Assembly (NCBI RefSeq): GCF_006345805.1
Contig: NC_042999.1
Coordinates: 135,656,001-135,720,000 of the forward strand
Source of the DNA: Octopus sinensis
Lineage: Eukaryota
DNA: 64,000 nucleotides
Reading direction: 5' to 3'
Every line of letters begins with the position of its first letter. Position 1 is the first letter of the stretch. Position numbers and translations under genes: made by a program. Positions 208 through 63,542 of the stretch are shown here, piece after piece. Below the pieces are notes generated by a model, which saw only the letters and a program-made list of their open reading frames with translations, made no database searches and was not told the DNA's origin.

Positions 208-293
208 CTCCTTATAGCTTGTACGGAAGTCTTCAGCTAACTGTGAGAGCATTTCTGTAGAGTTGGGGTCAGTGCTAGATTTCTGAAGTTCAT
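208..293 (-). CDS. RB1: RB1-like exon (86 nt): (D)[28 protein letters not shown]
   Basis: gtttag/gtaaat; phase 1 to 0. The 3' part resembles human TRIIEVLCKEHECNIDE. Confidence 0.78.
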
Positions 294-60900: not shown

Positions 60901-63542
60901 AAGTATGGTAGTCATCAAACAGTATTGAACCCTTTAGCATTTAAACTGGTTGTATCTAGCCCAAATATTCAATTGAGTTGGTCACTTGTTTCATGTTTAA
61001 AAAAAAAGGTTTCTCCTCTAAGAATTAAGATTTTCTAACATAGTGGAATATCTAAGGTCACTGATTTAATAAACACACTAAACTGAATAATTTAAGAGAG
61101 AGTAATTCCTTACATTTCAGAGTCAAAGAATAACACAGTGTAACAAAATTTTAACTTTTCTTTTTGTCTTTGGTCAGTAAGTGTTATTTCCTATTTGCTT
61201 CTATCTAGAAATCAAAGGAAATCACTACTATCCCCTCCAAATTTTGCTTTTGTGAACTGGACATAAATGTTCTGAAACTGACCTATTTTCCCATTACATT
61301 TCAGATGGGATCAGTGTTGCTCAAGCCGAAATATCGTTATAGCAAATATTCTGCTCAATACCACAGATTTATTTGTCAGTTGCTTGACCTTAATCACTTG
61401 AGCATATCCCTTAGTGGCTGACAATATATGCATCTCTGATCCTAAGCAGTAGTGGAGAAGCATCATAGCTATGTGTTGAGAGGGATTCTTTGGGGTTTGA
61501 ATAATTGTAACAAAAGTAAATTTTGAAAAATATTAGTCATTTTTCATACTTTCTAGGGGTAAGCAAATAGGAAATAACAGTTGCTAGTGAAGGAGAAAAA
61601 TTGTGTTACACAGCATTAATTGTCAAGAAGGTTAGTAAAAAACTTAGTCCCTTTTGTGCTATTCATTTAATGGATGGGTCACTGAAAGGCATATATGTTC
61701 TGTACAAATGTCATAAAGTTGAGGCATGATGCATTTCTTTGTCATTAACAACAAAGAATATGTTGTTAATAATACCCTGTAGAAATGTACAGACATCACA
61801 ATTTTTCTCTACATCCATTTTATACCTGTGTAAATTATGATCAACTAATATATTTTTCTTTTACCACATCTCAGATAAAGTTAATTTTTCATTAATTTTC
61901 TTACTCTAGCCCAGGGGTTCTCAACCATATTTTATCTATAGACCCCTTTGATTACCATTTTATTTTGGTGGACCTCCATAGTCATTCTATGTTTAAAAAC
62001 TAGTTTTAGAGATACCTCTTTTGAAATTCCCATTTCGTTTCTCACACATTAACTTGTGTAGGTTGAATTATATAAAATGTTAGAGAAAGAAACCTACTTG
62101 CTTCTTGTCATAAATACCAATACATACATCTAAAGCAAAATTTTTTTCAGGGGCCCTTAAAATACTATTGTAGATCCCCAGTTTGCTATTTTGTTGCATG
62201 GACTTCCCCAAAATCTTATATGGGCCTTCAGGAGCCATATGAACCCTGCTTGAAAACCACTGTTCTAGACCAACAAATAAATATATTTCTTCTGTATAGT
62301 TTTAGTACTTTACCTGCTAAAATTCTAAGTTACAGTGTGTCAACACCTTATTGATAAGCATCAACAAAGTGAAACATATCTAGAGTTATCTCCTGTACTT
62401 ATTGATATACAAATATTGGTTATTAACTAACATTTTTCTTCAACTATATATTTAATTTGGGATTTTTAAGGGTCTAAGCATTAGCTACACCTTCAAATTA
62501 ACATTAACTTGGCAAATTACACACACACACTGTTAAATTATAAGAATTTAGAAACTTCAAGAGATATGAAAATTAAAGGAGGAAATTGAAATATGTTGTA
62601 TTTTATACAGTAGGAAATGTTTACAATAGAATATGGAGAGCAAACCATTCTCATCAGCTTAGTGCCTCTTGACTACATATAATATTACAAAATGTTTACA
62701 TTCTTTACCAGTCAAGCTACTTAAATACAATTCTTATAAAAAGTTTTGTGGTTAACTTTTTAACTAACAGGGACATCACTCAAACTGAACAACTCAGTTT
62801 TTCATGAGGTGCAATAACAAAGTTTTTCTTTTATCATTTTGGTTGCAGCTTTATAATTACCATTATTATTGTAACACAGATTTTTTATGTTGTCGACTTC
62901 ACCATTTGGCTTATCACTAGAATATTATCAATTCAGTTACAGGACCACATTCAATACTTGACAAATATGTGTACTGATTTTACAGACAAGAACCAGACAC
63001 TATTGAATTACATTCAGGTGTGTAGAATGAGTGATTAGAATGCTAGATTGATGAATGAAAATTCTTCTGTCCAAGCTCTCTGCATATCTCTTGCTTCAGT
63101 CAATCTAAATGAAATGTCACAGGTTTCATAAGTGGGTAACCTGAAGAAATGCAGTATTCAAGCATTTAGCCAACAAAAATGTAGTCCAAATTGCAACAGA
63201 AATTGGTGATATATTAAAGACCTAAAGAAAATAAACAATGGTTTTTGGGGAACATATAAATGTACATAATTCATTTCAAAACATTTCTATATTATTTCAT
63301 ATTTAAAAAGCAAAAATAAAGTAACAAGTAAACTAATCTTGCAAGATTGTATAAGTTATTTGCAACTTACCAATATCTTTGGCATGTTTAAAAGCTTCTT
63401 CACTAGTAGTAGCAACTCGAAAATTTGGAACTCTTACACCGCCATCTTCCAATAATTTAAAGCTCAGATGCTCATGAAGAGACAAAGATCTTTTTTGTTG
63501 AGATTGAGGGTTTAGATTCAGAGAGAGGAGTGAAGAAAGCAC
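39874..63542 (-). CDS. SUCLA2: Succinate-CoA ligase [ADP-forming] beta subunit, mitochondrial; spliced CDS (10 exons in window, 5' exon outside)
   Basis: Exons 63371-63542, 59707-59812, 55374-55536, 53670-53840, 49483-49579, 48196-48357, 47355-47497, 43487-43607, 42352-42440 and 39874-39948 all have AG/GT boundaries. They join in frame (1299 nt = 433 codons) and give [80 protein letters not shown]. These motifs fit SUCLA2 better than SUCLG2. Confidence 0.97.
42352..42440 (-). CDS. SUCLA2: SUCLA2 exon (89 nt): (G)[29 protein letters not shown]
   Basis: Long T tract + cag acceptor, gtcagc donor; phase 1 to 0. Confidence 0.95.
42529..42736. mobile_element. piggyBac-type MITE, family 2 (TTAACCCTTTAGC..GCTAAAGGGTTAA)
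   Basis: TIRs and TTAA ends. Related copies at about 9982-10200, 16424-16625, 35238-35397 and fragments at about 14950 and 60929. Confidence 0.8.
43487..43607 (-). CDS. SUCLA2: SUCLA2 exon (121 nt): [40 protein letters not shown]
   Basis: ttatag/gtaagt; [10 protein letters not shown] motif. Confidence 0.97.
44065..45385. mobile_element. Helentron-associated (HINE/DINE-1-like) non-autonomous element, copy 1
   Basis: Starts TACTAGACTACTAGTGACCCG; has an internal inverted repeat with CA/TG microsatellites; closely similar to 58208-59282. Superfamily assignment is inference. Confidence 0.6.
47355..47497 (-). CDS. SUCLA2: SUCLA2 exon (143 nt): (V)[47 protein letters not shown]
   Basis: tttcag/gtaagt; invariant SCS-beta ligase-domain motif. 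Confidence 0.97.
48196..48357 (-). CDS. SUCLA2: SUCLA2 exon (162 nt): (V)[53 protein letters not shown]
   Basis: ttccag/gtaagt; phase 1 to 1. Confidence 0.97.
48560..48800 (+). mobile_element. 3' end of a Penelope-like element with a decayed hammerhead-like motif
   Basis: [14 protein letters not shown]-like codons followed by CTGATGA-A-AGATC-TTT-GATCT-GAAA (48751-48775). Confidence 0.5.
49483..49579 (-). CDS. SUCLA2: SUCLA2 exon (97 nt): [32 protein letters not shown]
   Basis: ttttag/gtaaag; phase 0 to 1. Not in the ORF track; found by searching for the expected KYDAT.EINP motif. Confidence 0.95.
51286..51922. repeat. Tandem repeat, about 2.6 units of 230-270 bp
   Basis: Units start CGCGAAGATACGAATG at 51286, 51556 and 51785; contain (GA)n and CAAGATGGCG. 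Confidence 0.9.
52043..52605. repeat. Large AT-rich fold-back element with about 230-bp inverted arms
   Basis: TTAGAGATAAAACCACTATTAGGCAAATCAAACAGTGAAAAAC.. versus ..GTTTTTCACTGCTTGATTTGCCTAATAGTGGTTTTATCTCTAA. Confidence 0.9.
53670..53840 (-). CDS. SUCLA2: SUCLA2 exon (171 nt): [57 protein letters not shown]
   Basis: ttctag/gtaaaa; phase 0 to 0. Confidence 0.95.
55374..55536 (-). CDS. SUCLA2: SUCLA2 exon (163 nt): [54 protein letters not shown]
   Basis: ttacag/gtaatg; phase 2 to 0. Confidence 0.96.
57173..58149 (+). mobile_element. Decayed Tc1/mariner element with imperfect TIRs
   Basis: GAGTGTACCATAAAG..GAATTTGAA versus TTCAAATTC..CTTTATGGAACACTC; TA flanks; fragments [41 protein letters not shown]. 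Confidence 0.85.
58208..59282. mobile_element. HINE/DINE-1-like element, copy 2
   Basis: Colinear with 44065-45385 but lacks that copy's SINE fragment and its roughly 95-bp TTAGGG-containing segment. Confidence 0.6.
59707..59812 (-). CDS. SUCLA2: SUCLA2 exon (106 nt): (E)[34 protein letters not shown]
   Basis: ttcag/gtgagt; phase 1 to 2; ATP-grasp [10 protein letters not shown] motif. Confidence 0.96.
61912..62262. mobile_element. hAT MITE, same family in opposite orientation
   Basis: CAGGGGTTCTCAA..TTGAAAACCACTG termini; flanks ctctagcc / ttctagac (NTCTAGAN-type target). Confidence 0.75.
63371..63542 (-). CDS. SUCLA2: SUCLA2 exon (172 nt): [57 protein letters not shown]
   Basis: tttag acceptor and gtaagt donor. 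QQKR|SLSLHE resembles the presequence end and mature N-terminus (human QQRNLSLHEY). Confidence 0.93.

What the first reader, a model, noticed from the sequence alone, without database searches (positions are those of the whole stretch)
208..63542. SUCLA2 and an RB1-type gene are immediate neighbours, echoing human 13q14.2
Seen: SUCLA2 ends at 39874 and the RB1-like ATG is about 12.5 kb downstream on the same strand, with no intervening gene detected. Known: human SUCLA2 and RB1 both lie at 13q14.2, separated by NUDT15, MED4 and ITM2B, on opposite strands. Inference: this may be an ancient bilaterian microsyntenic pair, notable because coleoid genomes are heavily rearranged. Orientation differs from human, so convergent juxtaposition is possible.
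Basis: partly seen in the sequence, partly recalled or inferred. Interest (0 to 1): 0.7.

Follow-up and report, generated by a model that had tools for sequence, protein, structure and literature searches.

The report
Octopus SUCLA2 beside RB1 gene
In this octopus chromosome piece a mitochondrial enzyme gene (SUCLA2) is followed directly by the retinoblastoma gene (RB1), two ordinary genes that are also near neighbours in humans, but the data do not show that this closeness is an ancient, preserved arrangement.

Summary
The window is Octopus sinensis CM016861.1:135,656,001-135,720,000. On the minus strand it holds SUCLA2 exons 2-11 (63542 to the stop at 39874). After 12,557 bp with no detectable gene comes an RB-family gene: ATG at 27316 and nine exons down to 208, continuing beyond the window.

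Both orthology calls hold. The SUCLA2 exons score 512 bits against human ADP-forming beta subunit and 361 against GDP-forming. The RB N-terminal part matches only RB1-type proteins. Its full-length Argonauta counterpart has RB1 architecture and scores 236 bits against the RB1 pocket and 132 against p107.

The same tandem arrangement is present in Argonauta hians, so it predates the Octopus-Argonauta split.

The "ancient bilaterian microsynteny" reading is not established. The two genes are not within 10 kb of each other in Patella, Mya, Lineus, Owenia or Patiria. Ciona also shows no RB gene there but lacks an RB1-type gene, so it is uninformative. None of these loci carries 13q14-type neighbours. 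In Mya both genes do lie on one chromosome, which fits a loose ancestral linkage. Squid, cuttlefish, Nautilus and amphioxus could not be examined.

Verdict: a real, ordinary gene pair and a modest evolutionary curiosity.

The parts
39874..63542 (-). SUCLA2 (succinate-CoA ligase, ADP-forming, beta subunit), exons 2-11 with their introns; exon 1 lies outside the window
   Evidence: Spliced translation is identical to P0001 residues 23-456 plus stop. PDB scores are 512 bits to human ADP-forming 6g4q_B and 361 to GDP-forming.
63371..63542 (-). SUCLA2 exon 2 (172 nt)
   Evidence: acceptor TTTAG, donor GTAAGT
59707..59818 (-). SUCLA2 exon 3 (112 nt)
55374..55536 (-). SUCLA2 exon 4 (163 nt)
53670..53840 (-). 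SUCLA2 exon 5 (171 nt)
49483..49579 (-). SUCLA2 exon 6 (97 nt)
48196..48357 (-). SUCLA2 exon 7 (162 nt)
47355..47497 (-). SUCLA2 exon 8 (143 nt)
43487..43607 (-). SUCLA2 exon 9 (121 nt)
42352..42440 (-). SUCLA2 exon 10 (89 nt)
39874..39948 (-). SUCLA2 exon 11, coding part, ending in the stop codon at 39876-39874
39101..39873 (-). Probable SUCLA2 3' UTR, with the only AATAAA/ATTAAA signal at 39139
   Evidence: An 870-bp block including the last exon is conserved with Argonauta at 70% (L010 1723-2523). The UTR end is inferred.
28742..39100 (.). Non-conserved intergenic spacer with decayed repeat copies and no detectable gene
   Evidence: No colinear Argonauta match. 13% is covered by copies elsewhere in the window. 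ORFs have no Pfam hit. No Rfam or tRNA hits. No gene is called in three assemblies.
27317..28741 (-). Conserved RB1 upstream region: candidate promoter and 5' UTR
   Evidence: Part of a 2-kb block (28741-26723) at 69% identity to Argonauta, with near-invariant 40-70 nt stretches at about 28740-28400. Function is inferred.
208..27316 (-). RB1-type retinoblastoma gene, exons 1-9 (N-terminal domain, 306 aa); the gene continues beyond the window start
27147..27316 (-). RB1 exon 1 (170 nt); ATG at 27316 with an in-frame stop 7 codons upstream
   Evidence: Read directly. The Argonauta annotated gene starts at the homologous ATG.
14625..14802 (-). RB1 exon 2 (178 nt)
12608..12663 (-). RB1 exon 3 (56 nt)
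11528..11596 (-). RB1 exon 4 (69 nt)
10303..10434 (-). RB1 exon 5 (132 nt)
9683..9724 (-). RB1 exon 6 (42 nt; its length is a multiple of three)
6949..7022 (-). RB1 exon 7 (74 nt)
5305..5415 (-). RB1 exon 8 (111 nt)
208..293 (-). RB1 exon 9 (86 nt), the last one inside the window

Best explanation
These are two ordinary, separately transcribed housekeeping genes lying head to tail. One is the true SUCLA2 orthologue, encoding the beta subunit of the ADP-forming mitochondrial succinyl-CoA synthetase. The other is the true RB1-subgroup orthologue, a cell-cycle pocket protein.

Shown:
- the gene models;
- the orthology of both genes;
- the empty 12.6-kb spacer;
- a separately conserved 5' region for RB1;
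- the same arrangement in Argonauta, so the adjacency existed in the common ancestor of Octopus and Argonauta.

Inferred:
- The two genes were already on one chromosome in the mollusc ancestor, and probably in the bilaterian ancestor. This is loose linkage within the same ancestral linkage group.
- They became immediate neighbours in the cephalopod or octopod lineage through the intrachromosomal reshuffling that marks coleoid genomes.
- The resemblance to human 13q14.2 then reflects shared chromosome-scale ancestry plus chance. It is not a selectively maintained gene pair, and there is no functional coupling between the two genes.
For: Gene identity:
- SUCLA2 is an exact match to P0001 and scores higher against ADP-forming than GDP-forming chains.
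- A HMMER search of the window's RB N-domain against 1.84 billion representative proteins returned only RB1-type proteins and no RBL1/2: Argonauta, Gadus 'Retinoblastoma 1', Patiria and Mya RB-like.
- The Argonauta orthologue has DUF3452, RB_A, RB_B and Rb_C with a 70-aa A-B spacer. It scores 236 bits to the RB1 pocket against 132 to p107.

Independent promoters:
- A 2-kb block around the RB1 ATG is conserved with Argonauta.
- The rest of the spacer is not conserved.

Octopod conservation:
- Argonauta has FAM192A, SUCLA2 and RB1 in that order, all on one strand, with 8.2 kb between SUCLA2 and RB1.

No tight linkage elsewhere:
- Patella has a C5orf34-like gene downstream of SUCLA2.
- Lineus has two NmrA-like genes and a MutS homologue.
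- Owenia has a GMC oxidoreductase and an Ig gene.
- Mya has an adh_short gene and ANAPC11.
- Patiria RB1 has a GT8 gene upstream and no SUCLA2.
- tblastn finds no unannotated RB or SUCLA2 exons in any flank.

Loose linkage:
- Mya RB-like P0127 and Mya SUCLA2 P0054 are both on a contig of 58,022,990 bp, which is CP111026.1.

Background:
- Coleoid genomes were extensively restructured, creating hundreds of new microsyntenies (PMC9023564).
Against: - The flanks visible were only 10 kb, so linkage within a few genes cannot be excluded in any of the negative species.
- Haliotis gave no neighbours at all.
- Ciona lacks an RB1-subgroup gene according to PMC3224931, so it says nothing.
- The distance between the two genes on the Mya chromosome is unknown.
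- No squid, cuttlefish or Nautilus genome could be examined, so the age of the adjacency within cephalopods is open.
- Humans keep the two genes within about 0.3 Mb with only three genes between. This rests on my knowledge of the human map; PMC12402595 names SUCLA2, NUDT15, MED4 and ITM2B as RB1 neighbours. That is closer than mere same-chromosome ancestry predicts.
Confidence: 0.6

Rival explanations
1. This is a true ancient bilaterian microsyntenic pair. SUCLA2 and RB1 were within a few genes of each other in the bilaterian ancestor. That closeness has been retained, possibly under regulatory constraint, in vertebrates and cephalopods, and has been broken or loosened independently in other lineages.
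For: - The genes are adjacent in two octopod families.
- SUCLA2 is described as an RB1-neighbouring gene in humans, alongside NUDT15, MED4 and ITM2B (PMC12402595); that exactly three genes lie between them is from my knowledge of the human map.
- They share a chromosome in the clam Mya.
- Both are true orthologues.
- The negative look-ups saw only 10 kb on each side.
Against: - Five informative non-cephalopod lineages show different immediate neighbours and no 13q14-type genes around SUCLA2 or RB1.
- In compact Lineus, two genes on each side are visible and none is RB.
- Orientation differs from human.
- No conserved non-coding sequence spans the spacer between Octopus and Argonauta.
- Two lineages fall short of the four or more required for a conserved ancestral microsyntenic pair (PMC3514665).
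- The pair is not mentioned in the main text of that survey, and no paper links the two genes with synteny.
Confidence: 0.2
2. This is a chance convergent juxtaposition. The genes were unlinked ancestrally, coleoid or octopod rearrangements happened to put them side by side, and the likeness to human 13q14.2 is coincidence.
For: - Coleoid genomes were massively reshuffled (PMC9023564).
- My rough estimate: with about 10^4 adjacent orthologue pairs per genome and about 5x10^-4 probability that a random pair lies within four genes in human, several such coincidences are expected per genome.
- Orientation and intervening genes differ from human.
- The upstream Argonauta neighbour FAM192A is not a 13q14 gene (plus my knowledge of the human map).
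Against: The genes share a chromosome in Mya. I estimate about a 6% chance of that for unlinked genes, taking 17 chromosomes from my own knowledge. They also share a chromosome in human, which points to ancestral chromosome-level linkage.
Confidence: 0.15
3. The two genes form a functional unit, with co-transcription or a shared regulatory domain coupling mitochondrial metabolism to cell-cycle control, and this keeps them together in octopods.
For: - Same strand, no gene between, and the arrangement is kept in two octopod families.
- In human tumours neighbouring 13q14 genes show correlated expression (PMC12402595).
Against: - The spacer is 12.6 kb, largely non-conserved and partly made of repeat copies.
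- SUCLA2 has its own polyA signal.
- RB1 has its own conserved upstream block.
- No expression or chromatin data were available here.
Confidence: 0.05

Closest known systems
Human 13q14.2 neighbourhood SUCLA2 - NUDT15 - MED4 - ITM2B - RB1
   Same: The same two orthologous genes are close together. In humans SUCLA2 is near enough to RB1 to be co-deleted with it in tumours (PMC12402595).
   Different: From my knowledge of the human map, three genes and about 0.3 Mb lie between them and they are on opposite strands, transcribed away from each other. In octopus there are 12.6 kb and no gene between them, and they lie in tandem on one strand. No NUDT15, MED4 or ITM2B was found in the window or in the Argonauta flanks.
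Argonauta hians BAAFZT010000015.1 locus (FAM192A - SUCLA2 - RB1)
   Same: Same gene order and strand, and the same RB1 start codon and exon structure. SUCLA2 is about 97% identical by my count, and the RB N-domain is 72% identical.
   Different: The spacer is 8.2 kb instead of 12.6 kb. RB1 exons 1-9 span 11.5 kb instead of 27.1 kb, because Octopus introns are inflated by repeats.
Conserved ancestral microsyntenic pairs (CAMPs; Irimia et al. 2012, PMC3514665)
   Same: An unrelated, non-paralogous gene pair is closely linked in distant animal lineages.
   Different: CAMPs require linkage with at most four intervening genes in at least four major lineages. Here only vertebrates and octopods qualify. 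Orientation is not conserved and there are no intergenic conserved elements.
Novel coleoid microsyntenies (Schmidbaur et al. 2022, PMC9023564)
   Same: A tight gene adjacency is seen in cephalopods and not in other molluscs examined, in a lineage known for genome reorganisation.
   Different: Those clusters are defined as absent outside cephalopods and are often expressed in the nervous system. This pair has a loose counterpart in humans and consists of housekeeping genes. It is not named in that paper's held supplements.

Membership tests
SUCLA2 (ADP-forming succinyl-CoA synthetase beta subunit) | ATP-grasp_2 plus Ligase_CoA domain architecture | tested here: met
   P0001, whose residues 23-456 are encoded exactly by the window, carries PF08442, PF24948 and PF00549.
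SUCLA2 (ADP-forming succinyl-CoA synthetase beta subunit) | Closer to the ADP-forming (SUCLA2) paralogue than to the GDP-forming (SUCLG2) paralogue | tested here: met
   512 and 511 bits to human ADP-forming chains 9swj_D and 6g4q_B, against 361 bits to GDP-forming 1euc, 2fp4 and 6wcv. All 107 source-named proteins among the 120 best database hits are named ADP-forming or carry only generic placeholder names; none is named GDP-forming.
SUCLA2 (ADP-forming succinyl-CoA synthetase beta subunit) | Complete gene present in the window | tested here: not met
   Exon 1 (aa 1-22, the start of the transit peptide) is not in the window. The annotated gene range of 36.6 kb starts upstream of coordinate 64000.
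SUCLA2 (ADP-forming succinyl-CoA synthetase beta subunit) | ADP/ATP nucleotide specificity of the enzyme | not testable with these tools
   This needs an enzyme assay.
RB1 subgroup of pocket proteins | RB N-terminal domain (RbN / Pfam DUF3452) | tested here: met
   The window-encoded 306-aa product scores 74.8 bits on DUF3452 against a cut-off of 26.3. Human RB1 N-domain 2qdj_A matches at E=3.4e-13.
RB1 subgroup of pocket proteins | Pocket A and B domains | tested here: inconclusive
   These exons lie outside the window. The colinear Argonauta orthologue P0121 has RB_A at 149 bits and RB_B at 98 bits. The O. sinensis exons themselves were not seen.
RB1 subgroup of pocket proteins | Closer to RB1 than to RBL1/RBL2 (p107/p130) | tested here: met
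   P0121 scores 236 bits to RB1 pocket chain 4ell_A and 132-133 bits to p107 pocket chains 4yoo and 4yoz. The window N-domain finds only RB1-type proteins among 1.84 billion representatives. No formal tree including RBL sequences was built.
RB1 subgroup of pocket proteins | RB1-type architecture: short A-B spacer and an Rb_C domain | tested here: met
   In P0121, RB_A is at 382-584 and RB_B at 655-772, giving a 70-aa spacer. Rb_C scores 36.3 bits against a cut-off of 21, and the protein is 955 aa long. That p107/p130 lack an Rb_C match and have a roughly 200-aa spacer is from my knowledge.
Conserved ancestral microsyntenic pair (PMC3514665) | Non-paralogous genes with at most four intervening genes | tested here: met
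   There are no intervening genes in Octopus and Argonauta. Humans have three, from my knowledge of the map; PMC12402595 names those genes as RB1 neighbours.
Conserved ancestral microsyntenic pair (PMC3514665) | Linkage present in at least four major metazoan lineages | tested here: inconclusive
   Only vertebrates and octopod molluscs qualify. The genes are not within 10 kb in Patella, Mya, Lineus, Owenia or Patiria. Flanks of 10 kb cannot count up to four intervening genes. Ciona has no RB1-type gene (PMC3224931).
Conserved ancestral microsyntenic pair (PMC3514665) | Signs of constraint: conserved orientation or conserved intergenic sequence | tested here: not met
   The genes are in tandem in octopods and on opposite strands in human (my knowledge). 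The spacer has no Octopus-Argonauta conservation apart from the SUCLA2 3' UTR and the RB1 5' region.

The most novel reading that the evidence does not exclude
SUCLA2 and RB1 were already close neighbours in the bilaterian ancestor more than 550 million years ago. That linkage has survived in both vertebrates and octopods, including the wholesale coleoid genome reshuffle. This would imply a constraint, such as a shared regulatory domain, tying a TCA-cycle and mitochondrial-DNA-maintenance gene to the central cell-cycle brake.
Probability: 0.15. Interest if true: 0.5.

Novelty: new member of a known kind. Interest (0 to 1): 0.25.

Why it matters
If the linkage were ancient, it would add one more conserved microsyntenic pair. 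It would also be a rare survivor of the coleoid genome reorganisation, useful as a marker for reconstructing cephalopod chromosome evolution. And it would hint at regulatory coupling between a mitochondrial enzyme and RB1, two genes whose co-deletion matters in human cancer.

As the evidence stands, it is an octopod-level gene adjacency of two well-known, already annotated housekeeping genes, with no sign of functional coupling.

The practical yield here is modest:
- a verified exon-level model of the first nine RB1 exons of O. sinensis;
- confirmation that octopods have a true RB1-subgroup gene;
- a clear list of the genomes that would settle the question.

Tried and rejected
Steps that led nowhere:
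This happened even though the Argonauta protein starts with the queried peptide, so it is a limit of the word index and not evidence against the gene.
The RB N-domain is too diverged for that route.
- Look-ups of Mya RB (P0127) and Patiria isoform X2 (P0126) were 'not on record'. Patiria isoform X1 worked.
- Supplements of the cephalopod microsynteny paper do not name either gene. No supplements are held for the CAMP survey or the metazoan chromosome paper. No paper combines SUCLA2, RB1 and synteny or microsynteny.

Ideas considered and rejected:
- A hidden gene in the spacer: no Pfam, Rfam or tRNA signal, no called gene and no conservation.
- A canonical E2F site (TTTSSCGC) in the 1.5 kb upstream of the RB1 ATG: none in Octopus or Argonauta.
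- The GPCR nested in the Patiria RB1 gene as a counterpart of human LPAR6 in RB1: its best matches are aminergic receptors, not P2Y/LPA receptors.
- A p107/p130 identity for the pocket-family gene.

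
Full report
**Where the window comes from.** The window is 100% identical over 34,127 bp to locus L002, taken from Octopus sinensis assembly GCA_006345805.1, chromosome record CM016861.1. It is 99% identical to the O. vulgaris record OX597816.1. From the L002 coordinates I place the window at CM016861.1:135,656,001-135,720,000, plus strand. Overall it is AT-rich (27-42% GC) and full of microsatellites and short interspersed repeat copies.

**SUCLA2.**
- Six-frame reading showed succinyl-CoA synthetase beta peptides on the minus strand.
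- A database search with the joined peptides returned SUCLA2 proteins. All source-named proteins among the 120 best hits are called ADP-forming or carry generic placeholder names. The best were Octopus vulgaris (P0001) and Argonauta hians (P0002).
- tblastn, followed by an exact splice-junction search, gave ten exons from 63542 to 39874. Every one has AG/GT boundaries, and the spliced translation equals P0001 residues 23-456 plus the stop codon.
- Exon 1 (22 residues) is outside the window, because the annotated gene covers 36.6 kb.
- Against solved structures the octopus peptide scores 512 and 511 bits with the human ADP-forming subunit and 361 bits with GDP-forming subunits.
- The gene is therefore the SUCLA2 orthologue, not SUCLG2.

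**The RB-type gene.**
- The minus-strand ORF at 27337-27146 holds an ATG at 27316, preceded by an in-frame stop and followed by a GTAAGT donor.
- In Argonauta hians the annotated gene that begins 8.2 kb downstream of SUCLA2 starts at the homologous ATG. It encodes a 955-aa protein with Pfam DUF3452, RB_A, RB_B and Rb_C.
- Two word-index homology searches with octopus RB peptides found nothing. So did tblastn with a remembered human RB1.
- A full HMMER search of 1.84 billion representative proteins with a provisional model did work. It found the Argonauta protein (P0121, E=2.9e-77) and seven weaker hits.
- Mapping P0121 back onto the window supplied the missing small exons.
- The final model has nine exons: 27316-27147, 14802-14625, 12663-12608, 11596-11528, 10434-10303, 9724-9683, 7022-6949, 5415-5305 and 293-208. 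All have canonical splice sites and compatible phases, giving 918 nt and 306 aa.
- The product aligns from first to last residue with P0121 residues 1-304 at 72% identity.
- Six of the nine exons, together with the block containing exon 1, are also recovered as colinear DNA matches to the Argonauta gene.
- It carries DUF3452 at 74.8 bits, and its only PDB matches are two human RB1 chains that contain the N-domain, 2qdj and 4elj.
The pocket and C-terminal exons lie beyond the window.

**RB1 or p107/p130?** The RB family split into an RB1 subgroup and an RBL subgroup before bilaterians arose. Sea urchin and amphioxus keep one gene of each (PMC3224931). Three results place the octopod gene in the RB1 subgroup.
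- The window's own N-domain finds only RB1-type proteins at E<=0.001 and no RBL1/2. The named ones are Gadus 'Retinoblastoma 1', Patiria 'retinoblastoma-associated protein-like', Mya 'RB-like' and a sturgeon fragment with RB_A and DUF3452. The set also includes two unnamed short fragments and one low-complexity false hit.
- The full-length Argonauta orthologue scores 236 bits against the human RB1 pocket but 132-133 against the p107 pocket.
- It has a 70-aa A-B spacer and an Rb_C match above threshold. From my knowledge these are RB1 features.

I did not build a tree that includes RBL sequences, because the homology searches were exhausted.

**The spacer.**
- Between the SUCLA2 stop and the RB1 ATG lie 12,557 bp.
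- No gene is called there, or in the corresponding 8.2 kb of Argonauta.
- ORFs of 55 aa or more are short and mostly of low information, and the five ORFs I submitted to Pfam had no hit.
- There are no Rfam or tRNA matches anywhere in the window.
- 13% of the spacer consists of copies of elements found elsewhere in the window.
- Comparison with Argonauta shows conservation only at the two ends. One end is about 0.87 kb covering the last SUCLA2 exon and its 3' UTR, with a polyA signal at 39139. The other is about 2 kb around the RB1 start, 28741-26723.
- This is what two independent transcription units look like. It gives no hint of shared regulatory sequence.

**How old and how wide is the adjacency?**
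- It is shared by Octopus and Argonauta, so it predates their split.
- Outside octopods I could see only 10 kb on either side of each gene.
- Around SUCLA2 the neighbours are:
  - Patella vulgata: a C5orf34-like gene.
  - Lineus longissimus: two NmrA-like genes and a MutS homologue.
  - Owenia fusiformis: a GMC oxidoreductase and an Ig-domain gene.
  - Mya arenaria: a short-chain dehydrogenase and ANAPC11.
  - Ciona intestinalis: fucosidase, a cofilin-domain gene, an unknown gene and a BIR gene.
  - Haliotis: no neighbour in range.
- Ciona is reported to lack an RB1-subgroup gene, so it is uninformative (PMC3224931).
- Looking from the other side, the Patiria miniata RB1 gene has a glycosyltransferase-8 gene upstream and no SUCLA2.
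- tblastn found no unannotated RB or SUCLA2 exons in any flank.
- None of these neighbours belongs to the human 13q14 set.
- On the other hand, the Mya RB-like protein and Mya SUCLA2 are both recorded on a contig of 58,022,990 bp, the length of chromosome CP111026.1. In a clam the two genes therefore share a chromosome.

**Weighing the interpretation.**
- The published criterion for an ancestral microsyntenic pair is linkage with at most four intervening genes in at least four major lineages. That threshold was chosen because fewer lineages give too many chance pairs (PMC3514665).
- Here two lineages qualify: vertebrates, with three genes between by my knowledge of the human map (PMC12402595 names SUCLA2, NUDT15, MED4 and ITM2B as RB1 neighbours), and octopods.
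- My rough estimate is about 10^4 adjacent orthologue pairs in an octopus genome. The probability that a random gene pair lies within four genes in human is about 5x10^-4. Several such coincidences are then expected per genome, and more if the genes already shared an ancestral chromosome.
- Coleoid genomes are known to have been reorganised on a large scale, with hundreds of new tight gene clusters (PMC9023564).
- The most economical reading is therefore loose ancestral linkage on one chromosome, tightened into immediate adjacency in the cephalopod or octopod lineage, with no functional meaning. I give this about 0.6.
- A truly ancient tight pair remains possible, at about 0.2. The flanks I could see were short, and the key genomes (Nautilus, squid, cuttlefish, scallop, amphioxus) were out of reach.
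- Pure convergence from unlinked genes gets about 0.15, and a functional unit about 0.05.

**Verdict.** Its evolutionary inference is neither established nor refuted, and the evidence gathered leans against a tightly conserved bilaterian pair. Both genes are ordinary and already annotated in public records. I found no paper that comments on the adjacency, and it is a small curiosity. Interest 0.25.

Noticed in passing
window 9683-9724 (-): RB1 exon 6 is only 42 nt, a multiple of three. Skipping it would keep the reading frame: exon 5 joins exon 7 in phase, as I first modelled before finding it. The Argonauta protein is labelled 'isoform X2', so alternative splicing in this region is plausible.
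   Followed up: partly
window 28400-28760 (-): About 1.1-1.4 kb upstream of the RB1 ATG there are near-invariant Octopus-Argonauta stretches of 40-70 nt. They include two copies of GAAGGTCAAGG and a CCCGCC box. No canonical E2F site (TTTSSCGC) occurs in the 1.5 kb upstream in either species. This may be the core promoter or a 5' UTR.
   Followed up: partly
window 208-27316 versus L010 10001-21493: RB1 exons 1-9 span 27.1 kb in Octopus sinensis but 11.5 kb in Argonauta hians. Intron 1 alone is 12.3 kb in Octopus and is filled with repeats and microsatellites.
   Followed up: partly
window 515-817, 1033-1514, 6939-7573, 12916-13321, 21922-22197, 40734-41079, 50782-51057 (both strands): Many copies of one short interspersed element occur in both orientations, in the introns of both genes and in the spacer. 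They are recognisable by pseudo-peptides such as [10 protein letters not shown]...FYVPPAQ. No tRNA-like head was called by ARAGORN.
   Followed up: no
window 1773-2108 (+), 3277-3507 (+), 57355-58044 (+), 22822-23187 (+), 30077-30683 (+): These are decayed transposable-element ORFs. Some look like mariner/Tc1 transposase pieces (one with a weak DUF4817 helix-turn-helix hit) and others like non-LTR retrotransposon tail fragments. They lie in RB1 introns, a SUCLA2 intron and the spacer. None is intact.
   Followed up: partly
L011 21430-22548 (-), Patiria miniata: A single-exon 372-aa GPCR gene sits inside the sea-star RB1 gene on the opposite strand. This recalls LPAR6 inside human RB1 (my knowledge). 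Its best structural-database matches are aminergic receptors (beta- and alpha-adrenergic, TAAR, dopamine D1, muscarinic), not P2Y/LPA receptors, so it is not an LPAR6 counterpart. No such gene is called inside the Argonauta RB1 gene, and no long ORF exists in the octopus part.
   Followed up: yes
L003 1-3531, Argonauta hians: The gene upstream of Argonauta SUCLA2, on the same strand, encodes a FAM192A/Fyv6-domain protein. No gene is called in the 10 kb upstream of SUCLA2 in either Octopus assembly.
   Followed up: no
The word-index protein search failed to return the Argonauta RB protein even when queried with an alignment containing its own first 56 residues. The index-free HMMER search found it at once. 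Negative results from the word-index tool should not be read as absence.
   Followed up: yes
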